64,000 nt of DNA from Obrimoposthia wandeli. Lineage: Eukaryota. The DNA lies in assembly GCA_977020255.1 (NCBI GenBank), contig CDROCS010002105.1, positions 62,001 through 126,000 of the forward strand, in the 5' to 3' direction. The notes under the pieces are model-generated. The model did not search any database, was not told the origin of the DNA, and saw only the letters and a program-made list of their open reading frames with translations. How positions within the stretch are numbered: position 1 is the first letter of the stretch; each line of letters starts with the position of its first letter. Positions 7,312 to 34,681 of this stretch are shown piece by piece. The translations under genes and the position numbers were made by a program.

Positions 7312-7334
7312 GGCGGCGCTATCTCCCTATTGCC

Positions 7335-7406
7335 TGAATGAATAGTACGGAAAGAATTACGATAAAGAATGAGACAGGTTTGTAAATGACTAGGAAAAAT
7401 TCCTAG
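7335..7406 (-). promoter_or_regulatory. Putative UhpA-activated promoter of uhpC
   Basis: Dyad CTAGGAA-AAA-TTCCTAG at 7390-7406 resembles the core of the E. coli uhpT UhpA site (recalled from memory). A -10-like TACTAT at 7347-7342 puts the dyad centre near -63/-64. Confidence 0.55.
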
Positions 7407-7411
7407 ATTAT

Positions 7412-9025
7412 TTAACTTGAGGTGATTTTTGTGGGCAAGTTAACAATAATTCGAGTGCCTTTATTGGTGTCGAATGTATTGTTAGCTTGATTAGTGTGGC
7501 TTTTATTTTGTCCGATGTAGAGGTCACCGCCAAGAGCACTAACCCGTTCTTCTATTCCTTTTAAACCTAGCCCCTTGCTACGCCAATTCGTTGGTAAGCC
7601 GCAGCCATTATCTCGTAATTCAAGGCTGAAAATGCCGCCGGGTACTAAGCTCAGCTGTACCTCTGTGGCGTGTGAGTGCTTGGTGACGTTATTTAATAGC
7701 TCTTGCACAATGCGATACAGCGTGACTGCTGTAATGTCATCGAGCTTGTTGGTGGCAATACCAATATTGATTTTAAAATCGATCTGACGCTCAGCAAATT
7801 TCATTTCGTGCGCAAGCTGGCGTAATGCGCTTTCTAGCCCCAGTTCATCAAGAATATGGGGGCGTAATTGGGTTAACAGCTGTTTGGTTGTGCTGTGTAT
7901 GCGCATGGCTAACGTATTGATTGTTTGTGCGGTATTTTTAGTGTTCAGTTCTTGGGTTGTTCGGTCGACAAGCATGGCTTGGATCTGAATGGCCGTAATA
8001 TTCTGACCAATTTCGTCGTGTAGTTCCCGTGCCACTGATTTTCTAATGTTTTCTTCAACTTGGACTAATTGGCAAGCGAGATATTGTTTGCTTGCAAGTT
8101 CATCAGCCAGATCTTTGTTCGCTTGTTGTAATTTTTGGGCTAGTAGGTATTGGCGGCTTATCGCTATCCCCAATCCAAGCCCGACTAAAGCTTGTGTTGT
8201 GATAAAAATTTGTAACTCTTGGTCTGTAGTAAATGAGCCTGAAATTTGACGAGCCGTCGTGAGCAAGATGCTGTTCATTACCGTGGCAAGAACGCCCCCT
8301 TGCCAGCCATAGTGATAAGCCATAAAAATATTGGGTAGCAGAATGATCAATAACCCGAGAGGTTTCATTTGATCTAATAGTGTGAGTTCAGCAACGAGCC
8401 CAATACAGAAAAAAGCAATACTCCAGAGTAACGCCGAAGGACGAAGGGTGATTTCTTTATGCACTAATGTTGGGCTTAATGGAACCCAGATTTTATGATG
8501 GAGGTAGTCATAAAGTAGATACAAGAACGGAGTCAGCAATACACCGCCAGTAATGGAGGCAATCGTACACGAAAAGGCATATTGAAGTGATAAATCTAAT
8601 GGCTTCATTAATAAGAGGATCATGATGCCCATGATTACGCCATGTACTAAGACCAATAACACCAAGGCGAGTAATTTTTGCCAATAGGTCGTTAGTTTTC
8701 GCCAATTATGGGAAAAAGGAATCGCGAGGAAATAGCTAAAGAATGGACACAATAATAATAATATGTCCTGAGGTTGGTGGTTGATGATAGACAGTAGCCA
8801 TGCAGAAAGAAGGCATTCACTGATGACAAATAATCGCCAATAGCGGCGAGCGGTTAAGACAAATACCGCGAGCCTTAATCCGCTAGGAAGAAATAACCCT
8901 GCAAGTAGTAAATCAGCGGAAAGGTAGCTACTGATACTCCACAAGCAAAACCAACTGATGCTATAGATAATAAAACTAAAGGAATACGAAAAATAACGAT
9001 TACTGAGGTGCTCTGCTTGGGTCAT
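7412..9025 (-). CDS. uhpB: Sensor histidine kinase UhpB (MASE1 + HisKA_3 + HATPase)
   Basis: Multi-TM N-terminus, H-box ARELHDEIGQ, N-box ELLNNVTKH, G1 RDNGCG, G2 GLGLKGIEERV. Confidence 0.92.
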   Translation of the reverse strand: MTQAEHLSNRYFSYSFSFIIYSISWFCLWSISSYLSADLLLAGLFLPSGLRLAVFVLTARRYWRLFVISECLLSAWLLSIINHQPQDILLLLCPFFSYFLAIPFSHNWRKLTTYWQKLLALVLLVLVHGVIMGIMILLLMKPLDLSLQYAFSCTIASITGGVLLTPFLYLLYDYLHHKIWVPLSPTLVHKEITLRPSALLWSIAFFCIGLVAELTLLDQMKPLGLLIILLPNIFMAYHYGWQGGVLATVMNSILLTTARQISGSFTTDQELQIFITTQALVGLGLGIAISRQYLLAQKLQQANKDLADELASKQYLACQLVQVEENIRKSVARELHDEIGQNITAIQIQAMLVDRTTQELNTKNTAQTINTLAMRIHSTTKQLLTQLRPHILDELGLESALRQLAHEMKFAERQIDFKINIGIATNKLDDITAVTLYRIVQELLNNVTKHSHATEVQLSLVPGGIFSLELRDNGCGLPTNWRSKGLGLKGIEERVSALGGDLYIGQNKSHTNQANNTFDTNKGTRIIVNLPTKITSS

Positions 9026-9028
9026 GAT

Positions 9029-9658
9029 TTATTCTGCGAGTAATTTATGTTGAAGCGCAAAACGAATAAGATCAACGTTATTAGACAGCCCCAGTTTGCT
9101 GAGAATACTGGCGCGATGAACATGAATGGTTTTATAGCTAATGGAAAGTATGATGCCAGCCTCTTTAACGTCTTTACCCTGAATAAGATGAGTAAAGACC
9201 TCGTGTTCACGCTTGGTTAATGCGTCTAAGGCTTTGGGCGCGATAGGCGCATTACTGAGGTTAAACAAGGCATCGGCGCAAAGGTAGCGATCACCATTGG
9301 CGACGGTACGAATGGCCGTCACTAATTCTACGGGACCACATCGTTTAGATAAGTACCCACATGCGCCAGCTTCAATTGCTTTACTTACAAAAGACGCTGA
9401 ATCATAAATACTAAGAATAATGGCTCTAAAATTAGGATGTTTTGCGCGCAGTTTTTCTAATAGGATTAGGCCACTTTCATCGGGCATCGAGATATCAATA
9501 ACGGCAACATCGATTTTGGACACTGATAATGCTGCAAAGGCTTCACTTGCACGACCATATTCACCCTTTACTTCAATATCTGATTCGACATTAAGCAACT
9601 GAGCAAAACCGGAACGTACCATAAGGTGGTCGTCAACTAAGGCTACTGTAATCATCAT
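9029..9658 (-). CDS. uhpA: NarL/FixJ-family response regulator UhpA
   Basis: Receiver domain (LVDDH, DISMPD, GYLSK) plus LuxR HTH (LTKREHEVF...KTIHVHRASILSKL). Confidence 0.92.
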   Translation of the reverse strand: MMITVALVDDHLMVRSGFAQLLNVESDIEVKGEYGRASEAFAALSVSKIDVAVIDISMPDESGLILLEKLRAKHPNFRAIILSIYDSASFVSKAIEAGACGYLSKRCGPVELVTAIRTVANGDRYLCADALFNLSNAPIAPKALDALTKREHEVFTHLIQGKDVKEAGIILSISYKTIHVHRASILSKLGLSNNVDLIRFALQHKLLAE

Positions 9659-9727
9659 GACATCCTAATTATATTGATCACATCGTCGCAAAAGAGAAAC
9701 AAGCATACAATTTAGAGTCGGTTTAGA

Positions 9728-9743
9728 TGTGATGGTCGTCGCG
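9728..9743. promoter_or_regulatory. CRP-like site upstream of uhpA
   Basis: TGTGA-tggtcg-TCGCG against the consensus TGTGA-N6-TCACA. Confidence 0.4.
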
Positions 9744-9771
9744 AAATAGTGCTACAACGTACAACAAATAA

Positions 9772-9792
9772 AGCCACACGTTGTGTGTGGCT
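9772..9792 (-). terminator. Intrinsic terminator of amt
   Basis: Stem AGCCACAC/GTGTGGCT followed by TTTATTT on the minus strand. Confidence 0.65.
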
Positions 9793-9850
9793 CATTGAAG
9801 GATCTTTATATTTTTTGTTTATATGGTTTTTGGCTATTGTTCTTAGTTTT

Positions 9851-11083
9851 TTAATCTTCGCTAACAGAACCGATTTTGTGAATGGCTAAATCAGCGCCGT
9901 TATATTCATCTTCATCCGTTAAGCGTATGCCGACGGTTTTCTTGATGATGCCGTAAACAATGAAAGCGCCGATAACAGCAATAGCAATACCAGCCAGTGT
10001 ACCGATAACTTGGCTTGCTAAACTCACACCACCTAAACCACCGAACGCTTCACTACCAAAAATACCTGCGGCAATACCGCCCCAAGCTCCGCACACACCG
10101 TGAAGCGGCCATACACCTAATACGTCATCAAGGTGAAGACGGTTTTGAATATAAGTAAATAGCCATACGAAAAGCGCACCGGCAATCGCACCTGTTACTA
10201 AGGCGCCAATGGGGTGCATAAGATCAGAACCCGCACATACAGCAACTAGGCCCGCTAAAGGACCGTTATGAATGAAACCTGGGTCATTTTTGCCAACAAA
10301 AAGGGACGTAAGAATACCGCCAACCATGGCCATTAACGTATTCACCGCAACCAGACCACTAATACTGCCCATTGTTTGTGCCGACATAACATTAAAGCCA
10401 AACCAACCAATGGTTAAAATCCAAGCCCCTAAGGCGAGAAACGGAATATTCGAGGGGGCAAAGGCAATTAAGCGTCCGCCACGGTAACGACCATTTCGAA
10501 TACCCAGCATGGCAACGGCAACAAGGGCTATCCAACCACCGACAGCGTGAACAACGACAGATCCCGCAAAGTCATGGAACCCAAAGCCAAATGTGTCGGT
10601 TAACCAACCTTGAAAACCATAATTACCATTCCACATGATACCTTCGAAAAATGGGTAGACAAAAGCCACGATAAAGAAAGATGCAACGAGCATAGGGTAG
10701 AAACGCGCTCGTTCTGCAACACCACCGGAAATAATGGCGGGAATGGCTGCTGCGAATGTCATTAAGAAGAAAAACTTCACTAATTCGTAGCCATTAATTG
10801 CGCTTAACTGCTCTGCACTTGAGAAGAAAGTGACGTCGTATGCGACCCAGTAACCAATAAAGAAATAAGCAATCGCAGAAAATCCGAAATCAGCAATGAT
10901 TTTGACTAAAGCGTTCACTTGGTTTTTTTGTCTAACGGTGCCAACTTCAAGAAAGGCAAACCCTGCGTGCATGGCAAGTACCATGATCGCACCCAATAGA
11001 ATAAATAAAGTGTTAGAACTTTGAACCAGTGTTTCTACAGCATGACTAATATTATCCACAATCGTCACCACATCCTTGTACAT
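9851..11083 (-). CDS. amt: Ammonium transporter (Amt family), with no adjacent glnK
   Basis: About 11 TM segments, GFAFLEVG, DFAGSVVVH and WPLHG (twin His), GWFGFN. Confidence 0.93.
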   Translation of the reverse strand: MYKDVVTIVDNISHAVETLVQSSNTLFILLGAIMVLAMHAGFAFLEVGTVRQKNQVNALVKIIADFGFSAIAYFFIGYWVAYDVTFFSSAEQLSAINGYELVKFFFLMTFAAAIPAIISGGVAERARFYPMLVASFFIVAFVYPFFEGIMWNGNYGFQGWLTDTFGFGFHDFAGSVVVHAVGGWIALVAVAMLGIRNGRYRGGRLIAFAPSNIPFLALGAWILTIGWFGFNVMSAQTMGSISGLVAVNTLMAMVGGILTSLFVGKNDPGFIHNGPLAGLVAVCAGSDLMHPIGALVTGAIAGALFVWLFTYIQNRLHLDDVLGVWPLHGVCGAWGGIAAGIFGSEAFGGLGGVSLASQVIGTLAGIAIAVIGAFIVYGIIKKTVGIRLTDEDEYNGADLAIHKIGSVSED

Positions 11084-11493: not shown

Positions 11494-13650
11494 TTAATCT
11501 ACATCGATATTCCGATCGCGTTTATCGTACATATCGGGTGTGGTGTGGAAATTACCCGCATAGCCGGCTTTTTGTAGCTTTTCTCGCACATCTTGTACGT
11601 TATTAGCTGTAATCGGTACAGTGCGATCGCCCAAGTATTGACGAATGAAAGAGATCAATTCAGACAACTGTGCATCCGTTAATATATTTTGGAAGCTGAC
11701 CATCGGCATGAAGTTTCTCTCTTCGCTGAGATAACTCGGCTCCAAACCACGAATAGTTACCGCAATAGTATTGTATGGGTCGCTGTGCATGATAATGCCG
11801 TTATTAAGCAAGGTTGGCGCAATAGGATCGCGCCCTTTACCGTCTTCGCCATGGCACACACCACAGGTCGTTTTGAAGAGTGTATACATGTCTGATTGCT
11901 TAGCTTGGTCTGTGAACCCGATTGGCTGCAACTGCTGAGTGTTAGGTGGAATGCGATTGTTGTCATCGCCGATCAGTAAATAGGTTGCCATCGCTTCTAC
12001 GTCGTCGCGGGTCATGAAACTGGTACTATTTTTAACGACGTCAGCCATGCCCCCAAATGCAGACCCTTTGTCGGAGTGGCCGGTGTGCAAAAAGTCGGTC
12101 AACGATTTAACGTCCCAACGATCTTGGTACAGCTCTTGCGATGAAATATTTGGGGCATTCCAACCATCAATCAAGTTACCTTGAAAAATTTTATCCGCTT
12201 CCAATGCTTGGGCAATATTTCGTGGGGTGTGACATTCAGAGCAGTGTCCAAGCCCCATTACTAAGTATTTACCGCGAGACCAAATGTCGGTTTCTTCTCC
12301 CGTTCCTCCTTTGGGAGCATTGCTAGTCAAATCGAGTGGGGCAGTATCCATAAAGGCGATATTCCAGCCGAGTAATCCCAAACGGATGTTTGATGGAAAT
12401 ATCATGCTGTTTTCGTCATTACGGCGTGGCACTGCAGTAATGGATTGTAGGTAATCCCACATCGCTAGCACATCATCTTCAGTGACGTATTGGTATGAGG
12501 TATAAGGCATTGCTGGATACAAGTAACCGTGCTTGCCTTTTCCGTCATACAGGGCGGCTTTGAAATCCTCATAGTTGTAATCCCCGATGCCTTCTGTGAC
12601 ATGCGGGGTAATGTTTGTAGAATATACGGTACCAAAAGGTGTTAAGAACGGCAGTCCGCCAGCAAACGGTTCACCCCCTTCAGCACTATGACAGGCAACG
12701 CAGTCACCCGCATAAGCGAGGTATTCCCCTTTCTTGATTGTATCTTCAGGGATGGCTGCGATCTTGGCATTGTGAGCAATACGTTGCTCAGTAATATAGG
12801 CACCTAACGCCAAAATTTCGTTATTGCTGAGTTGCCCTTCAAACGCAGGCATTACGTTATTTAAACCGTTATTAATTGTGTGCTGAATTTCTTCAATACT
12901 GCCACCGTGTACCCAGACGCTATCAGATAAGTTAGGTGCGCCAATCACTTGGTTTCCTTTTGCATCGGCACCATGACAAGCGACACAATTTTTCAAGAAC
13001 GCGGTTTTACCCAGATTGATTTTCACCGATGGCGCATTGAGCGGGCGTTGTTGCAACGATGCGAGATAGTAAGATATATTTTGAATGTCTTCTTTCGGTA
13101 AAATAGCTTTCCAACCCGCCATCGCACCATTTCTGCCTTGCTTAATTGAATGTAAAATTGCCTCGTCAGTACCACCATATAACCAGACATCATCTACTAC
13201 GTTAGGAAAATGCTTCTGACCTTGCCCATTCGCACGGTGACACGCGGCACAATGGGTTTGAAACAGTGCTTTACCTGATGCGGCAATGGCAGGCTCTGCC
13301 GCAAGTACGGTTAATGTTGGGGAGGTTATATTGGCAATTTGCTCATCGAGAGACGCACTGTGTTCTCGTGGGGTGTCATCACTTTGTTGCCAGCCGAGTA
13401 GCCCTTGCCAATTCCCTAACCCTGGATACAAGATTAAAAAGAGGATAGAGCAAGAAAAAGCAACAAAGTACGCAATGAACATAATGCGCGGTGGTGGGCC
13501 GTCATTTTCATCAATATTATCGAAAGAGTCGACCGTTTTATTCTCATCGGCAAGATGGTTAGTTTTCCAGTACTTAACCACGACCAATATCATAAATACT
13601 AAGAAAATAATGGTAAGGGTTATTACCCATATATTCCAAAATCCAGTCAT
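11494..13650 (-). CDS. ccoP: cbb3-type oxidase subunit III (CcoP) fused to a triheme cytochrome c (gluconate/aldehyde dehydrogenase cytochrome type); 5 CXXCH
   Basis: CcoP N-terminus (FWNIWVITLT...FDNIDENDGPPP...LYPGLGNWQGLLGW) with CAACH and CVACH. This continues in one ORF into KGEYLAYAGDCVACH...TPFGTVYSTNITP...CSECHTPR...CGVCH. Confidence 0.9.
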   Translation of the reverse strand: MTGFWNIWVITLTIIFLVFMILVVVKYWKTNHLADENKTVDSFDNIDENDGPPPRIMFIAYFVAFSCSILFLILYPGLGNWQGLLGWQQSDDTPREHSASLDEQIANITSPTLTVLAAEPAIAASGKALFQTHCAACHRANGQGQKHFPNVVDDVWLYGGTDEAILHSIKQGRNGAMAGWKAILPKEDIQNISYYLASLQQRPLNAPSVKINLGKTAFLKNCVACHGADAKGNQVIGAPNLSDSVWVHGGSIEEIQHTINNGLNNVMPAFEGQLSNNEILALGAYITEQRIAHNAKIAAIPEDTIKKGEYLAYAGDCVACHSAEGGEPFAGGLPFLTPFGTVYSTNITPHVTEGIGDYNYEDFKAALYDGKGKHGYLYPAMPYTSYQYVTEDDVLAMWDYLQSITAVPRRNDENSMIFPSNIRLGLLGWNIAFMDTAPLDLTSNAPKGGTGEETDIWSRGKYLVMGLGHCSECHTPRNIAQALEADKIFQGNLIDGWNAPNISSQELYQDRWDVKSLTDFLHTGHSDKGSAFGGMADVVKNSTSFMTRDDVEAMATYLLIGDDNNRIPPNTQQLQPIGFTDQAKQSDMYTLFKTTCGVCHGEDGKGRDPIAPTLLNNGIIMHSDPYNTIAVTIRGLEPSYLSEERNFMPMVSFQNILTDAQLSELISFIRQYLGDRTVPITANNVQDVREKLQKAGYAGNFHTTPDMYDKRDRNIDVD

Positions 13651-13652
13651 GA

Positions 13653-14270
13653 TTATTGCTCCTGATCGTGCATGGTATCGAGACCCAAGCTTTGTAGGTA
13701 ACGAATCAATGCTTCACCTTGGGTTTTGCCTACGACCTGAAGGCGTGCACCGTCAATATCATTATCGGAATAAGGTACACCTAGTGTTCTAAGTGTCTGC
13801 ATTTTATCGGTGATATCATCGCTATCTAGCACTTGTTCAAACAGCCAAGGGTAGGAGGGCATGAGTGATGTTGGTATAACATTGCGTGGGTTGATCAGGT
13901 GAATTTGGTGCCATTGATCTGAATATTTCCGTCCAATATTAGTCAGATCTGGCCCTGTGCGTTTTGAACCCCAGAGGTTTGGAAATTCGTAGATGTCATC
14001 AGCTTCTTTGTTGGCGCGACCGTTACGTAAAATTTCAGCTTCTAATGGTCTCACCATTTGGGTATGGCACACATGACAGCCTTCACTGATGTAGATATCA
14101 CGCCCTGCCAATTCTATGGCTGTTAATGGTTTAGCCAGAGACGTTTTTGCCAATTCGGCCGCCAAGAAAAGATTGGGTACGACCCACACCAACACCGAAA
14201 ACGCTGCTACGACGGTGGTTGATACAATTAGGATGAAAACGGATTGAGTAAAATCTTTACTGAACACCAT
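13653..14270 (-). CDS. ccoO: cbb3-type cytochrome c oxidase subunit II
   Basis: GRDIYISEGCHVCHTQMVRP, WGSKRTGPDL, SLMPSYPWL. Confidence 0.95.
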   Translation of the reverse strand: MVFSKDFTQSVFILIVSTTVVAAFSVLVWVVPNLFLAAELAKTSLAKPLTAIELAGRDIYISEGCHVCHTQMVRPLEAEILRNGRANKEADDIYEFPNLWGSKRTGPDLTNIGRKYSDQWHQIHLINPRNVIPTSLMPSYPWLFEQVLDSDDITDKMQTLRTLGVPYSDNDIDGARLQVVGKTQGEALIRYLQSLGLDTMHDQEQ

Positions 14271-15682
14271 TATTTACCCTCCATGGCCACTGTAGATGTC
14301 GCCTTGGATGACACGGTTTTATAGAGATTGAATACCATCATCAATAAGCCCACAACAAAGAATACGCCGCCTAAGAAGCGAACGAACAACCATGGTGCTT
14401 TGAAATCCATGGCTTCGACAAAGCTGTAAGCCAACGATCCGTTATCCAATTGGGTAAGCCACATATAGCCTTCGCCAATACCAGCAACCCATAGAGCAAT
14501 GGCATAGAGTGCGACGCCGATATGAGCAAACCAGAAGTGCCACTTCAACAAGCGATTCGACCAGAGTTCTTCTTTGCCCCACAAGCGCGGAATAAAGTAA
14601 TAGAATACTGCAATGCCTGACATACCGACCCAGCCCAGTGCGGCAGAATGCACATGGCCAATAATCCACTCGGTGTTGTGCGCTACCATGTTAAACCAGC
14701 GAATGGCGAGTAATGGCCCTTCAAAGGTGGCTAAGCAGTAATACAAAATGGCAGAAAAGAAGAACAACATGATGTAATCTTTTTTCAGTTTCTCTTTGTT
14801 CGAGAGTAAGGTCATGGCGCTGTTGAAAGCGCCACCCCATGACGGAATCCACAATATCAACGACATAACGATGCCGATATTTTGTATCCAAACCGGTACG
14901 GAAGAATAAATAAGATGGTGTGTGCCAGCCCAAGTATAGAAGCCGACTAAACCCCAAAAGTGGATTACTGATAAACGATAAGAATAAATAGGGCGTTCAG
15001 ATATTTTGGGAATGAAATAGTAATTCATCCCGATCACACCAGCTGTTAGTAAAAATCCGACAGCATTATGGCCCCACCACCACTGCACGATAGCGTCTTG
15101 TGCGCCGGCATAGATGGAATAGGATTTCCACATCGATACAGGAAGAGCCAAATTGTTGATGATAAAGATCATCGCGATCACGATGATAAATGCCCCGAAA
15201 AACCAATTAGCGACAAATATATGACTAACTTTTCTTATGGCAATGGTGCCAAAAAATAATATGGCGTACAGTACCCAAACAAGCACAATTAAAATATCGA
15301 TTGGCCATTCGAGTTCTGCGTATTCTTTGCTGGTGGTATAACCTAACGGCAAGGTAATTAACGCCAGTACTAATATAAGTTGCCAGCCCCAGAATACCAT
15401 CCAAGAGAGGCTTTTATTAAATAGAGGAACTTGGCTGGTACGTTGGACGATATAGATCGAGGTACCCATTAATATATTAACGACAAAGCCAAATATCACG
15501 CCGGAAGTATGAAGAGGGCGTAAGCGTCCAAATTGAAAATACTGTGAGTCAAAATTAAGTTGAGGCCAATAGAGCTGTGCCGCCAAAATAACACCGATTG
15601 TCATGCCTGCTACAGCCCAGATAACGGCAGCAACGACAAAATAGCGAACGACTTTAATATCGTAATCCCTAGCGATATCCAT
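14270..15682 (-). CDS. ccoN: cbb3-type cytochrome c oxidase subunit I
   Basis: FGRLRPLHT, EYAELEWPID, WWWGHNAVGF, WAGTHH, HNTEWIIGHVH heme-copper ligands. Start is the ATG at 15682 or the TTG at 15685. Confidence 0.95.
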   Translation of the reverse strand: MDIARDYDIKVVRYFVVAAVIWAVAGMTIGVILAAQLYWPQLNFDSQYFQFGRLRPLHTSGVIFGFVVNILMGTSIYIVQRTSQVPLFNKSLSWMVFWGWQLILVLALITLPLGYTTSKEYAELEWPIDILIVLVWVLYAILFFGTIAIRKVSHIFVANWFFGAFIIVIAMIFIINNLALPVSMWKSYSIYAGAQDAIVQWWWGHNAVGFLLTAGVIGMNYYFIPKISERPIYSYRLSVIHFWGLVGFYTWAGTHHLIYSSVPVWIQNIGIVMSLILWIPSWGGAFNSAMTLLSNKEKLKKDYIMLFFFSAILYYCLATFEGPLLAIRWFNMVAHNTEWIIGHVHSAALGWVGMSGIAVFYYFIPRLWGKEELWSNRLLKWHFWFAHIGVALYAIALWVAGIGEGYMWLTQLDNGSLAYSFVEAMDFKAPWLFVRFLGGVFFVVGLLMMVFNLYKTVSSKATSTVAMEGK

Positions 15683-15687
15683 CAAAC

Positions 15688-16026
15688 TTACTCCGTTTTA
15701 CTGTGCGATTCTGACCCAAGCGTTGAGTAATAGTGGGCAATGTCTTTCATGTCTTGATCTGTGAGTACATCGGCTTGCTGTTGCATTAAAATTGCTAGCC
15801 CGCTGGTACGTTCACGAGATTTGTAATCTTTAAGCGCAGACACAAGATAAGACGCACGTTGCCCGCGTAAATTTGGATAGGGATCGATCGTGGCAATGCC
15901 ATCGACACCATGGCACGTCATGCACACTTTTGCCTTTTGTTTCCCTACTTCAAATTGGTCTGATTCTTCAGCAAAGAGAGCATTGCTAAATAAGAGAATG
16001 CAGCTGGAGATTAACCATTTATTCAT
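15688..16026 (-). CDS. Periplasmic monoheme class I cytochrome c (c553/c554-like), first gene of the cco operon
   Basis: Signal peptide, CMTCH, YPNLRGQ, distal Met (LMQQQA). Confidence 0.88.
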   Translation of the reverse strand: MNKWLISSCILLFSNALFAEESDQFEVGKQKAKVCMTCHGVDGIATIDPYPNLRGQRASYLVSALKDYKSRERTSGLAILMQQQADVLTDQDMKDIAHYYSTLGSESHSKTE

Positions 16027-16428
16027 CGTTACAACCTAAATAGAATTACTTTAATAAAATTAGCCTATAAATGTTTTTTTGATAGTGAAAATAGGCAGAA
16101 TAATTAATCGATATTTTTTTGTTCTTGTCAGGGAGGTAAATAAAAGAAGGGTAATGTGTCTATATCTTTGGTTATTAATACGCAATTAAAGTGTGGGTAT
16201 TGGGTGTTTGTTAAATAAGCAAGATCTGCCTTTGTCAGGATTATTTAATTATAAACAATTACTTGTTGGGTTTTGTTTTTCTGGTTGTTATGAAAATAAC
16301 GTATTTATTTTCTGTTACGCTCAGTGCTATTTAATTGTTGATTATGAAAATAAAAATAATCACTTAACCAAAAGTGAAAATATTGAAAACTGTTATATGC
16401 TTTAACTTAAATCAACCCCCTTCCATTT

Positions 16429-16447
16429 GATAATGGTTCTCATTAAT
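16429..16447. promoter_or_regulatory. Fur box upstream of the Mo-hydroxylase operon
   Basis: GATAATGGTTCTCATTAAT matches 14/19 of GATAATGATAATCATTATC and ends 30 nt before the ATG. Confidence 0.55.
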
Positions 16448-16477
16448 TGGCCTTTCTTTAATTGTTAAGGAAGAAAT

Positions 16478-19330
16478 ATGACAGGGTCTACACTTTCTCG
16501 CCGATCTTTCATTAAGCAGTGTGTTATCGGAGGTGTCGCTGTTTACAGCGCACCGTTATTGATGAATATGAATAACGCACAAGCTGCAGCGATCTCTCCT
16601 GAATTGCTAGAACAATGGAAAGGGAAAAATAAGCCGAATTTTCGTTTAGATGGGATCGCGAAAGTAACGGGAGAGAAAATTTACGGACGAGATTACCGTG
16701 CCATTGATATCCCTGATTGGCCAGATGCACAAACACACGCGTATGTGTTGCGCGTAAATAAAGCGGATCGTGTATTCACGGGGATTGATTTAACTTGGCT
16801 GCCAGAAAATATGCAGCCGAATAAAGTAATTACAGCCAGTATGCTAGCGGCAGATAACGTCGAATTACCTGCATTTTATGGCGATAAGATGTTGTTAGCA
16901 GAAGGAGACACACCAGATTACCTTGGTCATCCTGTTGCACTTTTGTTATTTGATGATTTCACATCATTCAAACGGGCTAAAGTTCGATTACAGTTCAGTG
17001 AAAAAGCAATAAAATACGGTGCGATAGTACCTCTTACATCACTCAGCAAAGATCCTTACTCGGCATGGCGTATTATTCGTACCGAAGGTGAAGATGGTGC
17101 GGCGGGAAAAGACAAATACAGTACGTTGCAAGATGGCTTGTTCTTTGCGAATTATGAAAACCATAAACCAGTTTGGCCGACTCACTCTGATGAAATTGGT
17201 GATGCTGGGGCACGTGGTATGTTTTATGCTCAGCAGATGTCGAGGCTATTGGATAAGCAACAAGAAGACAAAACCTGGTTTATTCTGGATAAAACCTATC
17301 AAACTCAGTCTGTTGAACCAATGATGATGGAACCAGAATGCTTTAATGGTTGGTTTGATGGCACGAACAATACACTGCATGTTGTAATTACATGTCAATC
17401 GCCACAAGATTTTTATGCTCAAGCAGGTGAAATGTTAGCGCATAGCCCGTTAGCAGGCAAAATAGAAAAGCTGGTTGTACATTCCCCTTTCATTGGTGGT
17501 GGTTTCGGTGCGAAAGATCACTCAGCCTTCCCGTATTACGGTTTGCTCGCAGCGATGTATTCAGACAAGCCTGTTCGGTTAGCAAATGATCGGTTTGAGC
17601 AATTCCAAGCAGGATTGAAGCGGCATCCTTTTACTATGCATAACCGTTTAGCTATCGATAAAGAAACCCTCAAATTCAAGGCTGTCTTATCTGATATGAC
17701 GTTAGATGGTGGTGGCCGTAAAAACTTCACAGATTCTGTCACTATGGTCGGTGCCAGTGCGCTGCAAAGTATTTATTATTTTCCTCAAAATGATATTACC
17801 GCTGTTGCTTACCCTTCACAGACTCCTGATTGTGGCTCGATGCGTGGGTACGGTACTTTGCAGTCGATGGCTGCAATGGAAATGATGGTGAATGAATCGG
17901 CTGAATTGCTAGACGTTGATCCATTTCAGCTGCGGCTCTCCAATTTAATGGAACCTGGTTATCGCAACACTCAAGGCGCGATTCCAAATGGTACCGCGCG
18001 TTATCGTGAAATGTTAGAACTTGCTCAACAGCATGATATTTGGGTGAATCGTGCTACCAATAAAGCTACATTTGAAGCTGAAAACCCAGGCCGTCGATAT
18101 GGGGTTGGGTATGGCATTGCGACCAAAGATTATGGCAACGGTGCGCAAGCGCCTTCAGCGTATGTATCGGTGGCGAGTGATGGCAGTATTGTTGTACGTG
18201 TTTCCTCAATGGAGATGGGAACAGGCACTCAAACGGCACAAGGCATGCTGATAAGTCGATATCTCGGCAATATGGCCGATGATGTGTCGTTAGCAGAAAT
18301 TCAGTTGTGGGATGCAATGCAATTGAAAGAAACAGATTCACCGTACTTGATCTCGCAAGAGCGGCAAAATGCGATGGCGAAAAATCCGCGTTGGACGCCT
18401 GTAGCAGGCATGGCATCTTCAGCGTCGCAATCGGCGTATTACCAAAGTCATGCAACAGAAAATGCAGCGCGACTAATATTTGAACATGGCTTATGGCCTG
18501 CCGCGGTTGCGATCTGGAAAAAACATTATTTCAATGGTGAGTATGCCGTGGCTGATTTTGGTGATATCGGCAATGCTCGTTGGGTTGACGGTAAATTGAC
18601 TGCCAGTGGTTACCCCCCGTTACCGCTAGAAATCGTGGCGAAGCAAGCGCACATGATGGGTTTGGTGACGGGCGTAATGGTGCATGGCTTTAATCGGTGG
18701 GCATGGACAGAAGCAGAATTTGATGTAGAAGGGCAGCGTCAAAAACTTGCAGTAGATGCTATGGCTTTGCAATACGGAGAAGGGGCGTCGTTAGAGAAGC
18801 AAGCTTTAATGGCTGGTGATGGGTTTCATTTGTTAGATCGGGTGTCTGTAAATTACCCACTCACATCGCTCAATAACGCGATGGTGACCTATTATGCCCC
18901 CTGTGGCACCTTGGCTGAAATTGCCATTCATGAAGGCAGTGGTGAAGTGGAAGTATTGCGTACGCACACATGGTTAGAGTGTGGACGAGTGCTCGTCGAA
19001 AAGTTGGTGGAAGGACAAATTGAAGGTGGCTTGGTGATGGGGCTTGGTCATGCATTGCATGAATATTTACCGTCTGATGCTGAAGGGGCGGGTAACGGTA
19101 CGTGGAACCTCAACCGCTACCAAGTACCTTTAGCTAAACATGTTGGTGTGTGGAATCTCACTCATACAACCCTCCCTCCATTATCAGATACCGACCCCAG
19201 TAAAGGCATTGCTGAAGTAGTGATGATTCCTATTGTTCCTGCGTTAGTTGAAGCGATATATCAAGCTTCAGGTGCTCGTTTCTACCATCTTCCAATTACC
19301 GCAAAAGAGATTAAGAAGGCATTAGTATGA
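16478..19330 (+). CDS. Tat-exported xanthine-oxidase-family molybdopterin-binding subunit (IorB/AldH-like); substrate unknown
   Basis: Twin-arginine SRRSFIK with an AQA cleavage site. Moco motifs GGGFGAK, MRGYG, MEMGTG, GQIEGG, SKGIAE (catalytic Glu). Confidence 0.9.
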   Translation: MTGSTLSRRSFIKQCVIGGVAVYSAPLLMNMNNAQAAAISPELLEQWKGKNKPNFRLDGIAKVTGEKIYGRDYRAIDIPDWPDAQTHAYVLRVNKADRVFTGIDLTWLPENMQPNKVITASMLAADNVELPAFYGDKMLLAEGDTPDYLGHPVALLLFDDFTSFKRAKVRLQFSEKAIKYGAIVPLTSLSKDPYSAWRIIRTEGEDGAAGKDKYSTLQDGLFFANYENHKPVWPTHSDEIGDAGARGMFYAQQMSRLLDKQQEDKTWFILDKTYQTQSVEPMMMEPECFNGWFDGTNNTLHVVITCQSPQDFYAQAGEMLAHSPLAGKIEKLVVHSPFIGGGFGAKDHSAFPYYGLLAAMYSDKPVRLANDRFEQFQAGLKRHPFTMHNRLAIDKETLKFKAVLSDMTLDGGGRKNFTDSVTMVGASALQSIYYFPQNDITAVAYPSQTPDCGSMRGYGTLQSMAAMEMMVNESAELLDVDPFQLRLSNLMEPGYRNTQGAIPNGTARYREMLELAQQHDIWVNRATNKATFEAENPGRRYGVGYGIATKDYGNGAQAPSAYVSVASDGSIVVRVSSMEMGTGTQTAQGMLISRYLGNMADDVSLAEIQLWDAMQLKETDSPYLISQERQNAMAKNPRWTPVAGMASSASQSAYYQSHATENAARLIFEHGLWPAAVAIWKKHYFNGEYAVADFGDIGNARWVDGKLTASGYPPLPLEIVAKQAHMMGLVTGVMVHGFNRWAWTEAEFDVEGQRQKLAVDAMALQYGEGASLEKQALMAGDGFHLLDRVSVNYPLTSLNNAMVTYYAPCGTLAEIAIHEGSGEVEVLRTHTWLECGRVLVEKLVEGQIEGGLVMGLGHALHEYLPSDAEGAGNGTWNLNRYQVPLAKHVGVWNLTHTTLPPLSDTDPSKGIAEVVMIPIVPALVEAIYQASGARFYHLPITAKEIKKALV

Positions 19331-19860
19331 CGACGATTAAAATGACGGTAAACAATCAGTCAGTCGGTCCGATTGATGTCTCGCCCGAGCTAATGATGAT
19401 TGAATTTCTTCATGAGCATCTGAATCTAACAGGAACGAAATTTGGCTGTGGTGCAGGCGTGTGCCATGCGTGCACAGTGATTGTGGATAAAGAGGATGGT
19501 ACCAGTGAAGTTGTGAGAAGTTGCATTAATGGTGTTGAGCGTTTCAATGGAAAAACGATTCGTACTGTTGAAGGGCACGCTACTAAGAATGAACAAGGAC
19601 AAATTGAAGCACTCAGTAATGTGCAAGAAGCCTTTATTGAACATTTTTCATTTCAATGTGGTTGGTGCACGCCGGGCTTTGTAAATGAAACGACTGTTTT
19701 GTTAGAAAAGCTAAAAAAGCAGCCAGTTGCGGTGGGTGAAGTGGATAACGTAATAGCGAAGGCTTTGGGCGATCATATCTGTCGTTGTACTGGTTATGTA
19801 AAGTATTACCAAGCAGTTAAAGATCTTATTCTGACCACAGAAGGATTGACCTTATCATGA
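19327..19860 (+). CDS. 2x[2Fe-2S] small subunit of the Mo-hydroxylase
   Basis: GTKFGCGAGVCHACTV, QCGWCTPG, CRCTGY. Overlaps the upstream stop codon and has no signal peptide of its own. Confidence 0.93.
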   Translation: MTTIKMTVNNQSVGPIDVSPELMMIEFLHEHLNLTGTKFGCGAGVCHACTVIVDKEDGTSEVVRSCINGVERFNGKTIRTVEGHATKNEQGQIEALSNVQEAFIEHFSFQCGWCTPGFVNETTVLLEKLKKQPVAVGEVDNVIAKALGDHICRCTGYVKYYQAVKDLILTTEGLTLS

Positions 19861-21191
19861 AAATGTTACGTTCATCCTCGAGACTTTCTTCGGTATTTAT
19901 CAAGCCTAATAACATAGGTAGGCTAACGGTATTAATAGCAGCGGTTGTGATGAACATGATTGCTATCGAACGCGTGATAGCGGCTGAAGAGAACACATCG
20001 TCAGCTAATCAGAAAAACGATAAAGATATGATTGAGAAAGGCGCTTATTTAGCCAAAATGGGAGATTGTGTGGCTTGTCATACTATTCCTGATGGACAAG
20101 AATTTGGTGGTGGACTCGCGTTTTTTACACCATTTGGCACTATGTATTCCACGAATATTAGCTCAGATAAAGATCATGGAATTGGTCATTACAGCTACGA
20201 AGATTTTTATTCAGCATTGCATGATGGTATCGCACCAAAAGGTAATCTGTATCCGGCGATGCCTTACACTTCTTATCGCTTGTTAACCGATGATGATACC
20301 CGTGCGTTGTATGCTTTTTTTATGAATACCCAACCTGTACAACAAAAGAATAAAGGCAATGATGTGGGTTTCCCATTCAATATTCGTATGGGATTAAAGG
20401 GATGGAATCTGGTTAATCTTGAAAGTGGAATATTCCAACCAGTACCAGACAAGAGTGAGGCGTGGAACAAAGGTAACTATATTGTGAATGCCTTAGGTCA
20501 TTGTGGCGAATGCCACACGCCGCGGGGTACCTTATTCGCGATGGATGAGTCTAAGCAATTTGAGGGGGCAATGATTGAAGGTTATGAAGCCTCAAACATT
20601 ACATCAGCAGAGTTGAACCGACAAGCTTGGACAGCCATGGATCTAGAGCAATTGTTGCGGACAGGATATTCTCGTAAAGGTACTATTTTTGGTGGTATGT
20701 ACCCAGTGGTATATCACAGTTTGAGTTATTTAACGGCAGATGATATGTCGGCAGTTACTACCTATTTATTAGATACCGATTTGGCAGTAAGCGAGGTTGT
20801 TGAACCGGTAGCATTAACCTTTAATGGGCATGATGAATCAGCCCCAGGATATGGTTTATACAATGCCTATTGCGCAGGATGTCATGGTGTTGATGGAGAA
20901 GGAAAACCGAATATTTCGCCAGCGATGGCGGGTAATTCTACTCTGGATCAAGCCGAACCCATTAATACCGTTGCTGTCTTGCTAAATGGCGTAGGCGATC
21001 AGCGATACAGCCAAACGCAAAGTTTTTATGCCATGCCAGGCTACCGTAACGAGATGGATAAACAACAACTGACAGACTTAATCAATTACTTGCAAAAAAC
21101 GTGGACGACCCAGAAAGGCGAATTAACCCAAGAAAAGATCAATATGATTATTTCTAAAGTGGAGGATAGTTTGCCAGATGCAGCTCACTGA
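19857..21191 (+). CDS. Triheme cytochrome c subunit (AldF/gluconate dehydrogenase cytochrome type)
   Basis: Signal/anchor sequence, GDCVACH, GHCGECHTPR, YCAGCH, TPFGTMYSTNIS, YPAMPY. Confidence 0.9.
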   Translation: MKMLRSSSRLSSVFIKPNNIGRLTVLIAAVVMNMIAIERVIAAEENTSSANQKNDKDMIEKGAYLAKMGDCVACHTIPDGQEFGGGLAFFTPFGTMYSTNISSDKDHGIGHYSYEDFYSALHDGIAPKGNLYPAMPYTSYRLLTDDDTRALYAFFMNTQPVQQKNKGNDVGFPFNIRMGLKGWNLVNLESGIFQPVPDKSEAWNKGNYIVNALGHCGECHTPRGTLFAMDESKQFEGAMIEGYEASNITSAELNRQAWTAMDLEQLLRTGYSRKGTIFGGMYPVVYHSLSYLTADDMSAVTTYLLDTDLAVSEVVEPVALTFNGHDESAPGYGLYNAYCAGCHGVDGEGKPNISPAMAGNSTLDQAEPINTVAVLLNGVGDQRYSQTQSFYAMPGYRNEMDKQQLTDLINYLQKTWTTQKGELTQEKINMIISKVEDSLPDAAH

Positions 21192-22179
21192 TCATCACGT
21201 ACTACAACAAGTATTTGCATGGTTGAAAGATAACCAACCTGTTTGGTTATGTACCATTGTCGCTACATATGGTTCTGCGCCACGTCCTATTGGTTCACTG
21301 TTTGCGACGAATGGTCATGATCGTATTGGTTCTATCTCGGGAGGCTGTTTAGAAGAATCTTTTGTCGCCATGCTTAAAGAGGAGGGATCGGTATTTACCG
21401 AAGCTGCTAGTTTGTTTAGTTATGGAAATCATATAGCCGATCAAGGTTCAGTATTGGAGTTGCCTTGTGGCGGTACGATTACGTTACTGATTGAGCGTTT
21501 ACAGCCTGACCAACTAACATTGCACCAGTACGCACAATGGGTAGAGTTGGCGGAATACAAAAAACCGTTTCAGCGTAAGGTCTGTTTACGCACAGGGCAA
21601 GTAACCTTACAAACTGATACTGATGCTTTGTTATTACAGCCTTCGCAAAATGGTACGGGGGCGAGTGTGTCAGAAGTATCGGTGACACTATATTATTCTC
21701 ATGTATGGCAGCTATTAATTTTGGGGATAAGTCAGGTTAGTTATCACGTGGCTCAGCTGGGTCTTATGGCGGGGTATGAGGTGAAAATCTGCGACATGCG
21801 TGAAGAGCTGCAAGATGCTTGGCATTTTGCTGCGAAACAAGGTGGTGTGGATATAACTTGGTTATCGCCAGACTTATTTGTTGATCAATATTGTGACAAA
21901 CAAACCGCTGTTTTAGCGTTAGCTCATGACCCTAGAATTGATGATATCGGCCTGATGGGCGCCTTAGAATCATCAGCATTTTATATTGGAGCAATGGGTT
22001 CATTACGCACCAGTGAAAAGCGCGTTGAGCGTTTACACCGTATAGGAGAATATGACTACGATACTTTGGCTCGTTTACATGCGCCAATTGGGTTAGATAT
22101 TGGCAGCAAAACGCCAATGGAAATTGCCATCGCTATTATGGCGGATATTATTTCGCATAAAAACAAAGTATACATTTAA
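21178..22179 (+). CDS. xdhC: XdhC/CoxI-family Moco sulfuration/insertion chaperone
   Basis: GSAPRPIGS, SISGGCLE, LPCGG, HDPRID, YIGAMGS, LHAPIGLDIGSKTPMEIAIAI. Confidence 0.92.
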   Translation: MQLTDHHVLQQVFAWLKDNQPVWLCTIVATYGSAPRPIGSLFATNGHDRIGSISGGCLEESFVAMLKEEGSVFTEAASLFSYGNHIADQGSVLELPCGGTITLLIERLQPDQLTLHQYAQWVELAEYKKPFQRKVCLRTGQVTLQTDTDALLLQPSQNGTGASVSEVSVTLYYSHVWQLLILGISQVSYHVAQLGLMAGYEVKICDMREELQDAWHFAAKQGGVDITWLSPDLFVDQYCDKQTAVLALAHDPRIDDIGLMGALESSAFYIGAMGSLRTSEKRVERLHRIGEYDYDTLARLHAPIGLDIGSKTPMEIAIAIMADIISHKNKVYI

Positions 22180-34036: not shown

Positions 34037-34681
34037 ATGAAAAAAGTAATTAATAGCGTCGGTTATTCAAATAACATTTTTATCGATGGTGAATATCAAT
34101 ACCATATTGAACAAACTAAAATGTTCACCCAGTTACTGCTTGATGTATTAAGGTATGATTATGTCGAAATTAATCAATCGTTTATTGCGAGTATGAATAC
34201 TGCCGCTATCATGCATGATCTGGGAAAAAGCTTTATTCCTGAATCGATTATTTTTAAAAAAGGCACATTGTCTGCGTCTGAATATGACGTCATCAAAACA
34301 CATACGACACTTGGTTATGAGCACTTTTGTACATTAAGTATGAATGTGGATACGCCTTTAAATCAGATTACTAAAGATGTGATTTTATATCACCATGAGC
34401 ATTGGGATGGTACTGGCTACCCGCATCAAAAAGCAGGGTACGATATCCCTCTTTCAGCCCGTATTATTGCACTTGCCGATGTGTTTGAAGCCTTGATCAG
34501 TATACGTTCATATAAAGAACCATTTTCTTTTGAAAAAGCAAAGAAGATCATATGTGAAAGTAGTGGTCATCACTTTGATCCAGCTATTGTCGCTGCTTTT
34601 CTTAAACAAGAAACCAAGTTTGAACAGCTGACTAAAATGCTACAAAGTCAGTCACTATCTAGGCATCTACAGAGTGCCTAA
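34037..34681 (+). CDS. Stand-alone HD-GYP domain protein (putative c-di-GMP phosphodiesterase)
   Basis: MHDLGK, HHEHWDGTGYP, ARIIALADVFEAL, RSYK. No N-terminal sensor. Start uncertain (34019 or 34037). Confidence 0.85.
   Translation: MKKVINSVGYSNNIFIDGEYQYHIEQTKMFTQLLLDVLRYDYVEINQSFIASMNTAAIMHDLGKSFIPESIIFKKGTLSASEYDVIKTHTTLGYEHFCTLSMNVDTPLNQITKDVILYHHEHWDGTGYPHQKAGYDIPLSARIIALADVFEALISIRSYKEPFSFEKAKKIICESSGHHFDPAIVAAFLKQETKFEQLTKMLQSQSLSRHLQSA

What the first reader, a model, noticed from the sequence alone, without database searches (positions are those of the whole stretch)
11494..13650. Five-heme CcoP fusion and absence of ccoQ
Seen: one uninterrupted 718-aa ORF with five CXXCH motifs (CAACH, CVACH, CVACH, CSECH, CGVCH). 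The junction lies near residues 290-305 (about 12730-12790). No ccoQ sits between ccoO and ccoP, and ccoGHIS are absent from the window. Known: canonical CcoP is about 300 aa with two hemes. Inference: an extended electron-entry arm that gives this oxidase its own donor specificity.
Basis: partly seen in the sequence, partly recalled or inferred. Interest (0 to 1): 0.75.

Follow-up and report, generated by a model that had tools for sequence, protein, structure and literature searches.

The report
Five-haem CcoP in spare cbb3 oxidase
This marine bacterium carries a spare oxygen-reducing enzyme (a cbb3 oxidase) whose electron-receiving subunit is permanently joined to a three-haem module that dehydrogenases normally use to hand electrons on. 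The fusion is conserved in many Vibrio relatives, and I found no paper that describes it.

Summary
A 718-aa ORF lies on the minus strand at 11494-13650, with five CXXCH motifs. Residues 1-288 are a complete CcoP. Residues 302-718 are a complete three-haem cytochrome c of the kind that forms the cytochrome subunit of membrane-bound alcohol, aldehyde, fructose and glucose dehydrogenases.

The fusion is not an artefact. More than 100 proteins of 714-723 aa in Aliivibrio, Vibrio, Photobacterium, Shewanella, Psychromonas and Sinobacterium keep it, with every haem motif invariant and no homologue split at the junction.

It belongs to a self-contained four-gene cassette (c552-like cytochrome, ccoN, ccoO, five-haem ccoP) whose flanks differ between genomes. 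ccoQ and ccoGHIS are indeed missing, but that is ordinary for a second cbb3 operon.

In trees the fused module groups with the cytochrome subunits of 950-aa Tat-exported molybdenum dehydrogenases. One such operon sits beside the cassette here and, in a different arrangement, in Psychromonas marina. About 24 other genomes lack it nearby.

The best reading is an added electron-entry arm. The donor and the direction of flow are untested.

The scan noted this stretch before. On other DNA pieces it noted other cbb3 oxidases with CcoP fused to c4- or TsdB-type cytochromes. This is a new variant of a known kind.

The parts
11494..13650 (-). Five-haem ccoP (718 aa): a complete CcoP fused to a complete three-haem cytochrome c.
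   Evidence: ORF and translation. TIGR00782 scores 199.1 bits against a cut-off of 179.95. Homologues of 714-723 aa are listed.
12787..13650 (-). CcoP module, aa 1-288. It has two membrane helices (about aa 3-33 and 55-74), a FixP_N region, and two haem domains (CAACH 134, CVACH 222; Met177 and Met267 are the likely sixth ligands).
   Evidence: Aligns 1-287 to 1-299 of Pseudomonas CcoP (8snh_G at 2.9e-50, 3mk7_C). Hydropathy is, helices, invariant Met residues.
12748..12786 (-). Junction, aa 289-301. It is the end of a long helix (276-298), followed at once by the first helix of the three-haem module (302-314). It is variable in sequence and never interrupted.
   Evidence: AlphaFold2 secondary structure and alignment A1.
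11494..12747 (-). Three-haem module, aa 302-718 (CVACH 317, CSECH 470, CGVCH 596; Met381, Met535 and Met650 are conserved).
   Evidence: 8gy2_B at 7.2e-64, 8hdd_B at 1.3e-63, 7w2j_C at 3.4e-56 and 8gy3_A at 4e-46 over the whole length. Foldseek gives target-normalised TM-scores of 0.71-0.76.
11497..11568 (-). C-terminal tail, aa 695-718. It is conserved in the fused family, absent from free relatives, and predicted disordered. It may be a docking peptide.
   Evidence: Alignment A1, pLDDT below 50 for 699-718, tail comparison.
13653..14270 (-). ccoO (205 aa, one haem c).
   Evidence: PF02433 at 3.3e-62. TIGR00781 scores 203.9 against 200.65.
14270..15685 (-). ccoN (471 aa), the catalytic subunit.
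   Evidence: TIGR00780 scores 600.1 against 583.15. Full-length match to 3mk7_A and 9g6b_A.
15688..16026 (-). Secreted one-haem cytochrome c (112 aa) of the c552 / c554 / half-c4 type. It is the first gene of the cassette and a likely dedicated shuttle.
   Evidence: 2zzs_A at 1.1e-24, 1cno_A, 1etp_A. Signal-like N-terminus and CMTCH motif. Present in all cassette loci.
16027..16477 (.). Divergent intergenic region between the cassette and the molybdenum dehydrogenase operon. No FNR-type box and no motif shared with other cassettes was found.
16478..22179 (+). Neighbouring operon and candidate partner, not part of the conserved cassette. It encodes a Tat-signal molybdopterin subunit (950 aa), a [2Fe-2S] subunit (177 aa), its own three-haem cytochrome c (444 aa, 38% identical to the fused module) and an XdhC-type maturation factor (333 aa).
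   Evidence: Pfam, twin-arginine N-terminus, pairwise comparison, trees.

Best explanation
This is the third subunit of an accessory cbb3-type cytochrome c oxidase. The oxidase is encoded by a self-contained four-gene cassette: a secreted c552-like cytochrome, CcoN, CcoO and a five-haem CcoP. A complete CcoP, with its membrane anchor and two haems, has been fused through a short helical connection to a complete three-haem cytochrome c. That module belongs to the family which periplasmic dehydrogenases use as their built-in electron outlet. Its closest free relatives are the cytochrome subunits of 950-aa Tat-exported molybdenum/[2Fe-2S] dehydrogenases. I infer that the added module is an extra electron-entry arm. 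It would take electrons from periplasmic donors and pass them through the two CcoP haems and the CcoO haem to the CcoN active site, without going through the quinone pool and the bc1 complex. In this genome and in Psychromonas marina the donor is most likely the adjacent molybdenum dehydrogenase, acting either directly, or through its own three-haem subunit, or through the c552-like cytochrome. Shown here: the domain identities, conservation of the fusion and of the haem ligands, the cassette structure, and the phylogenetic affinity. Inferred: the direction of electron flow, the identity of the donors, and bypass of bc1.
For: The N-half passes the CcoP equivalog cut-off and aligns end to end with solved CcoP. 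The C-half aligns end to end with the cytochrome subunits of solved alcohol, glucose, fructose and aldehyde dehydrogenases. The fusion is kept at 714-723 aa in more than 100 proteins from six genera, with all five CXXCH motifs and the Met ligands invariant. The closest relatives of the C-half alone are all fused proteins. The cassette (cytochrome, ccoN, ccoO, five-haem ccoP) is intact in 22 of 23 species-representative loci while the flanks differ. The fused modules and the cytochrome subunits of Mo950-type dehydrogenases form one split with 100/99 support against GMC-, Mo736- and oxidase-associated relatives. This held after four more Mo950-type sequences were added to break the long branches. 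The Mo950 operon adjoins the cassette head-to-head in this species (window; L081-L083) and tail-to-tail in Psychromonas marina (L086). Free members of the same three-haem family sit in haem-copper oxidase operons elsewhere, which shows that the family does serve oxidases. These are a cbb3-type operon in Ancylobacter L047 and COX2-COX1 operons in eight alpha- and betaproteobacteria.
Against: The Mo950 operon is not within 10 kb of the cassette in 22 other species loci, in Sinobacterium or in V. cyclitrophicus. Three Mo950 operons examined have no cbb3 genes nearby. Species of the V. splendidus and V. harveyi groups carry the cassette but are absent from the 120 best Mo950 hits. The cassette therefore cannot depend on that dehydrogenase in general. 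The dehydrogenase has its own three-haem subunit, so it does not obviously need the fused one. There is no expression or biochemical evidence: no RNA run holds the stretch.
Confidence: 0.55

Rival explanations
1. The oxidase oxidises quinol. The three-haem module would oxidise membrane quinol directly, making this a cbb3 oxidase that needs no bc1 complex.
For: The homologous cytochrome subunits of the alcohol, fructose and glucose dehydrogenases react with ubiquinone (titles of 8gy2, 7w2j and 8hdd; my own knowledge of the acetic-acid-bacteria enzymes). The cassette travels alone with variable flanks, so a donor present in every host, such as quinol, would fit.
Against: The module has no hydrophobic or membrane-inserting segment. 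Its tail is hydrophilic and predicted disordered. I could not identify or test any quinone-site residues. The cassette always carries a soluble c552-like cytochrome, which points to cytochrome c as donor.
Confidence: 0.12
2. The oxidase is a generic accessory enzyme with no link to a dehydrogenase. The three extra haems would only lengthen the wire or broaden docking for soluble cytochromes reduced by bc1 (the cassette's c552-like protein, c4, c5). On this view the adjacency to the molybdenum dehydrogenase is incidental or inherited.
For: Most cassettes have no dehydrogenase nearby. The c552-like gene is the only conserved companion. Half-c4-type cytochromes are known cbb3 donors; cytochrome c4 is present in 8smr and 8snh.
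Against: Adjacency to the same rare operon type occurs in two genera in opposite arrangements. The module is sister to that operon's cytochrome subunit. The three-haem part is more conserved than the CcoP part: 69-72% against 63-65% for the whole protein in Vibrio homologues.
Confidence: 0.25
3. The module is an electron outlet, as in Neisseria. It would carry electrons away from CcoP to a periplasmic reductase, so that CcoP acts as a hub.
For: The precedent is the third haem domain of Neisseria CcoP, which feeds nitrite reductase (PMC2924362).
Against: No reductase gene is conserved next to the cassette. The module's relatives all carry electrons away from dehydrogenases or sit in oxidase operons.
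Confidence: 0.05
4. The ORF is an artefact or a pseudogene, or it is processed into two proteins at the junction.
For: None from sequence. One draft genome (V. ishigakensis, L023) has a fragmented copy.
Against: Hundreds of intact 718-aa copies exist. The breaks in L023 lie away from the junction and its ccoN is broken too. Shorter database entries start near residue 183 or sit on short contigs, never at the junction. The junction is a helix-turn-helix without a conserved cleavage motif. Proteolysis itself cannot be excluded from sequence.
Confidence: 0.03

Closest known systems
Canonical CcoP (FixP), the two-haem subunit III of cbb3 oxidases (P. stutzeri 3mk7_C, P. aeruginosa 8snh_G)
   Same: The membrane anchor, FixP_N region and two haem c domains match, as does the gene position after ccoN-ccoO. 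The match is end to end.
   Different: It carries 430 extra residues with three more haems. It belongs to an accessory operon without ccoQ that begins with a cytochrome c gene.
Three-haem cytochrome c subunits of membrane-bound dehydrogenases (ADH subunit II 8gy2_B, ALDH 8gy3_A, FDH 7w2j_C, FAD-GDH beta 8hdd_B)
   Same: It has the same three-domain fold, 26-32% identity by Foldseek, and three CXXCH motifs with Met ligands.
   Different: It is not a separate secreted polypeptide. It is usually not encoded with a dehydrogenase. It has a family-specific C-terminal tail. Any reaction with quinone is unknown.
Cytochrome subunit of the 950-aa Tat-exported molybdenum/[2Fe-2S] dehydrogenases (window 19857-21191; L024, L086, L088-L090)
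   Same: These are the closest free relatives (38-41% identity) and the sister group in both trees. They are encoded beside the cassette in two genera.
   Different: They are free-standing with their own signal sequence, lack the conserved tail, and are absent near most cassettes.
Neisseria three-haem CcoP (PMC2924362)
   Same: It is a natural modular fusion of an extra haem c domain to the C-terminus of CcoP, and it rewires electron flow.
   Different: There the addition is a single c5-type domain behind an Ala/Ser/Pro-rich linker, and it acts as an outlet to nitrite reductase. Here the addition is a three-haem dehydrogenase-type module behind a short helical connection.

Membership tests
CcoP / FixP (cbb3 oxidase subunit III, TIGR00782) | Scores above the curated equivalog cut-off. 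| tested here: met
   199.1 bits against 179.95, residues 37-287.
CcoP / FixP (cbb3 oxidase subunit III, TIGR00782) | N-terminal membrane anchor followed by two haem c domains with CXXCH and Met ligands. | tested here: met
   Hydrophobic stretches at aa 1-31 and 54-80. FixP_N. CXXCH at 134 and 222; Met177 and Met267 invariant.
CcoP / FixP (cbb3 oxidase subunit III, TIGR00782) | Encoded directly after ccoN and ccoO. | tested here: met
   ccoN 14270-15685 and ccoO 13653-14270; the gap to ccoP is 2 nt.
CcoP / FixP (cbb3 oxidase subunit III, TIGR00782) | About 300 aa with exactly two haems. | tested here: not met
   718 aa and five CXXCH motifs. I therefore file it as a variant.
CcoP / FixP (cbb3 oxidase subunit III, TIGR00782) | Assembles with CcoN and CcoO into an active oxidase. 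| not testable with these tools
   This needs purification or cryo-EM.
Three-haem cytochrome c subunit of membrane-bound quinone-reducing dehydrogenases | Full-length homology across three haem c domains, with three CXXCH motifs and Met ligands. | tested here: met
   E-values of 7e-64 to 4e-46 against solved subunits over aa 302-690. Target-normalised TM-scores of 0.71-0.76. C317, C470, C596, M535 and M650 are invariant in 52 sequences.
Three-haem cytochrome c subunit of membrane-bound quinone-reducing dehydrogenases | A separate secreted polypeptide encoded in one operon with the catalytic subunits. | tested here: not met
   It is fused to CcoP. No dehydrogenase lies within 10 kb in 22 of 23 species loci. 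A dehydrogenase is adjacent only in this species and in P. marina.
Three-haem cytochrome c subunit of membrane-bound quinone-reducing dehydrogenases | Transfers electrons to ubiquinone. | not testable with these tools
   I found no residue-level definition of the quinone site.
Neisseria-type extended CcoP | A third haem domain derived from cytochrome c5, behind a low-complexity linker. | tested here: not met
   The extra part is a three-haem dehydrogenase-type module and the linker is helical. The features of the Neisseria protein are taken from PMC2924362.

The most novel reading that the evidence does not exclude
The three-haem module gives this C-family oxidase a quinol-oxidising entry, so it reduces oxygen with electrons taken straight from the quinone pool without bc1. 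As far as I know, every characterised cbb3 oxidase is a cytochrome c oxidase. A somewhat less radical and more likely version, at about 0.3, is that the module docks the Mo/[2Fe-2S] catalytic subunits. That would form a hard-wired substrate-to-oxygen supercomplex.
Probability: 0.12. Interest if true: 0.85.

Novelty: new variant of a known kind. Interest (0 to 1): 0.55.

Why it matters
cbb3 oxidases are the high-affinity oxidases that let many bacteria, including Vibrio pathogens of fish and shellfish, respire at low oxygen. How electrons are routed to them decides energy yield. This report describes a widespread, conserved second cbb3 oxidase, present in many Vibrio, Photobacterium and Shewanella genomes and annotated only as 'c-type cytochrome'. 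Its entry subunit has absorbed the module that dehydrogenases use to export electrons. If the module docks dehydrogenases or oxidises quinol, it defines a respiratory short-cut around the quinone pool, the bc1 complex, or both. It would also show that the three-haem 'subunit II' cytochromes are general adaptors for oxidases and not only dehydrogenase subunits. Free members of the family in cbb3 and COX operons of other proteobacteria point the same way.

Tried and rejected
1. I scanned 400 nt upstream of 20 cassettes for an FNR/Anr box (TTGAT-N4-ATCAA). There were no hits with one mismatch or fewer and nothing was conserved.

2. I aligned 13 upstream regions and found no shared motif.

3. I tested whether the fused module lacks a hydrophobic C-terminal anchor that free relatives have. 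None of the sampled free relatives has one either, so the test does not discriminate.

4. I compared the two-haem cytochrome encoded upstream of many free three-haem genes with the CcoP domains. The similarity is only generic (22% identity, E 0.002), so that gene pair is not a split form of this fusion.

5. I searched the literature for a five-haem or extended CcoP and for the quinone site of the dehydrogenase cytochrome subunits. Only the Neisseria three-haem CcoP turned up.

6. I looked for RNA-seq support. No RNA run holds the stretch, so I did not use read laying.

7. I did not run the large representative-protein search, because no claim here rests on absence of relatives.

Full report
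**Observation.** The ORF is real. It is an ATG-to-stop frame of 718 codons at 11494-13650 on the minus strand. It holds five CXXCH motifs at residues 134, 222, 317, 470 and 596. The window has no N and a G+C content of 40.9%. The ccoO stop and the ccoP start are 2 nt apart, with a ribosome-binding-like GGAG upstream. There is therefore no ccoQ between them. The 410 nt downstream hold no small membrane-protein ORF. Pfam scans of every non-overlapping ORF of 150 aa or more found no ccoG, ccoH or ccoI-type protein.

**Anatomy.**
- Residues 1-287 align end to end with solved CcoP from Pseudomonas (8snh_G at 2.9e-50, 3mk7_C at 2.4e-47). They pass the NCBIfam CcoP equivalog cut-off (199.1 against 179.95).
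- This part has two hydrophobic helices and the FixP_N region.
- Residues 302-690 align end to end with the three-haem cytochrome c subunits of membrane-bound alcohol dehydrogenase (8gy2_B, 7.2e-64), FAD glucose dehydrogenase (8hdd_B), fructose dehydrogenase (7w2j_C) and aldehyde dehydrogenase (8gy3_A).
- An AlphaFold2 model (mean pLDDT 80.9, pTM 0.75) finds the same two sets of structures by Foldseek.
- In the model the last CcoP helix (276-298) runs almost directly into the first helix of the three-haem module (302-314). The connection is therefore short and probably stiff.
- The final 20 residues are predicted disordered yet conserved.
- The Met residues expected as sixth haem ligands are invariant or nearly so: 177, 267, 381, 535 and 648/650.

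**The fusion is conserved.**
- A word-based search returned more than 100 proteins of 714-723 aa that cover 100% of the query at 60-96% identity. They come from Aliivibrio, Vibrio (the splendidus, chagasii, harveyi, rotiferianus and mediterranei groups and others), Photobacterium, Shewanella, Psychromonas and Sinobacterium.
- Sources annotate them as 'c-type cytochrome', 'cbb3-type subunit III', 'cytochrome c6' or 'thiosulfate dehydrogenase'.
- A search with the C-half alone again returned only fused proteins among the closest hits.
- The few shorter entries sit on short contigs or start near residue 183, never at the junction.
- The single fragmented genomic copy (V. ishigakensis L023) is broken away from the junction, and its ccoN is broken too.

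**The cassette.**
- In 22 of 23 species-representative genomes the same four genes occur in the same order: a 110-140 aa cytochrome c, ccoN, ccoO and the five-haem ccoP. The 23rd is the broken L023 copy.
- All-against-all clustering of flanking ORFs found no other gene shared by more than 9 loci.
- In Sinobacterium the cassette sits among housekeeping genes between yicC and gmk.
- The first gene encodes a secreted one-haem cytochrome. It resembles V. parahaemolyticus c554, Pseudomonas nautica c552 and half of cytochrome c4.
- CcoN is an ordinary full-length CcoN.
- The best hit of the neighbouring molybdenum subunit (97% identity) is labelled Photobacterium profundum. That species has a canonical cbb3 elsewhere (PBPRA1834; PMC3669370). 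This is therefore a second, accessory oxidase.
- The absence of ccoGHIS is expected for such an operon. Absence of ccoQ has a precedent in the first cbb3 operon of P. stutzeri (PMC4742706).

**Origin of the added module.**
- The genome scan also returned 57 free three-haem relatives at 34-40% identity.
- I classified them by their neighbours. There were 21 next to a GMC flavoprotein with a gluconate-2-dehydrogenase-type small subunit. Nine were next to a molybdenum/[2Fe-2S] dehydrogenase. Eight were in operons with COX2 and COX1. Eighteen had only an upstream two-haem cytochrome.
- In a maximum-likelihood tree the fused modules form one clade (100/100). They group at 100/99 with the cytochrome subunits of the 950-aa type of Tat-exported molybdenum dehydrogenase.
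- Long branches met there, so I added four more subunits of that type from Psychromonas, Shewanella frigidimarina and two metagenome contigs. The grouping held at 100/99, and the Mo950-type subunits formed their own clade at 95/91.
- The window's own 444-aa cytochrome (19857-21191) is 38% identical to the fused module over 392 residues.

**Link to the molybdenum dehydrogenase.**
- In the window the cassette is head-to-head with an operon for a twin-arginine-signal molybdopterin subunit (950 aa), a [2Fe-2S] subunit, the 444-aa three-haem cytochrome and an XdhC-type factor.
- Contigs of the same species (94% identical protein) keep this layout.
- In Psychromonas marina a homologous operon (60% identical large subunit) lies tail-to-tail just downstream of the five-haem ccoP.
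- If two single-copy modules were placed at random in a genome of about 5 Mb, they would lie within about 1 kb of each other roughly once in a thousand genomes. This is my estimate. Two genera with different arrangements therefore argue for a functional tie, or at least for linkage that has been retained.
- Against a general dependence, no such operon lies within 10 kb in 22 other species loci, in Sinobacterium or in V. cyclitrophicus.
- Three Mo950 operons examined from the dehydrogenase side have no cbb3 nearby.
- The splendidus- and harveyi-group species that carry the cassette do not appear among the 120 best Mo950 hits, although that list reaches down to 46% identity.

**Parallel cases.** Free members of the same three-haem family are encoded inside haem-copper oxidase operons in other lineages.
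- In Ancylobacter (L047) one lies in a run of thioredoxin-like, three-haem, TsdA-like, ccoN-like, ccoO, extended CcoP-like and TsdA-like genes.
- In eight alpha- and betaproteobacteria the order is two-haem cytochrome, three-haem cytochrome, COX2 with a CuA motif, COX1, two-haem cytochrome.
- These sit in different parts of the tree. The family has therefore been recruited to oxidases several times.
- Earlier notes of this scan, which are unchecked leads, describe other accessory cbb3 operons whose CcoP is fused to a c4- or TsdB-type cytochrome next to SorAB or TsdA. The same stretch was also noted as a possible Mo-hydroxylase and oxidase pair.

**Mechanism.**
- The best-supported reading is that the three extra haems form an added electron-entry arm on an accessory cbb3 oxidase.
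- Domain identity, conservation and ancestry are shown.
- The direction of flow, the donors and any bypass of bc1 are inferred.
- The rivals are: direct quinol oxidation; a merely longer wire for bc1-reduced soluble cytochromes; an outlet as in Neisseria (PMC2924362); and an artefact or processing.
- I found no FNR box, no shared upstream motif and no RNA data that could narrow these down.

**Novelty.**
- Extended CcoP is known only from Neisseria, as far as my searches show. There a single c5-type domain was added.
- I found no paper describing a CcoP fused to a dehydrogenase-type three-haem cytochrome.
- The proteins themselves are already in public databases under generic names.
- I therefore rate this as a new variant of a known kind, of moderate to good interest.
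- The large representative-protein search was not run, so the taxonomic limits of the fusion are provisional.

Noticed in passing
window 16478-22179 (+): This is an operon for a Tat-signal molybdopterin subunit of unusual length (950 aa; the first 260 residues or so have no Pfam match), a [2Fe-2S] subunit, a three-haem cytochrome c and XdhC. The substrate is unknown. Homologues at 46-70% identity occur in Shewanella, Aeromonas, Psychromonas, Microbulbifer, Cupriavidus, Pseudomonas, Collimonas and Campylobacterales.
   Followed up: partly
L047 3419-10873 (Ancylobacter sp.): A single run of genes encodes a thioredoxin-like protein, a free three-haem cytochrome of the same family, a TsdA-like cytochrome, a ccoN-like protein, ccoO, an extended CcoP-like cytochrome and a second TsdA-like protein. 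It looks like a cbb3 oxidase wired to thiosulfate oxidation and equipped with a separate three-haem cytochrome.
   Followed up: partly
L026, L049, L059, L061, L063, L066, L069, L077 (about 9000-14400 in L061): Operons in alpha- and betaproteobacteria have the order two-haem cytochrome, three-haem cytochrome, small COX2 with a CuA motif, divergent COX1 (only 96 bits to CtaD), two-haem cytochrome. This is a haem-copper oxidase accompanied by seven c-type haems.
   Followed up: partly
L028-L030, L034, L041-L043, L050, L051, L053, L055-L057, L062, L065, L067, L073: In Burkholderiaceae and one uncultured gammaproteobacterium (L029), a two-haem cytochrome gene abuts a three-haem cytochrome gene with no dehydrogenase or oxidase gene nearby. 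These three-haem proteins are the closest relatives of the COX-operon ones.
   Followed up: no
window 11497-11568 (aa 695-718 of the five-haem CcoP): This is a conserved hydrophilic C-terminal tail (pattern A-G-Y/F-A/T-G-x-x-H-T-T-P-x-M-Y). It is found only in the fused family, is predicted disordered, and may be a docking motif.
   Followed up: partly
L023 7984-12153 (Vibrio ishigakensis JCM19241): Both ccoN and the five-haem ccoP are in pieces in this draft genome. This reflects either sequencing frameshifts or a decaying cassette.
   Followed up: no
PMC8671102 (Photobacterium comparative genomics): The paper lists the cbb3 oxidase as 'ccoNOP' in P. phosphoreum and P. iliopiscarium. Relatives of that clade (L015, L017, L021) carry the five-haem cassette, so in some species it may be the only cbb3 oxidase.
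   Followed up: no
window 5986-11083 (-): Downstream of the cassette lie an ammonium transporter, a UhpA/UhpB-like two-component pair (the kinase scores 406 bits, just under the UhpB cut-off of 408) and an MFS transporter. The same genes follow the cassette in the same species.
   Followed up: no
window 30416-32293 (-), 34678-35781 (-), 54594-55274 (-): Three ORFs of 625, 367 and 226 aa have no Pfam match.
   Followed up: no
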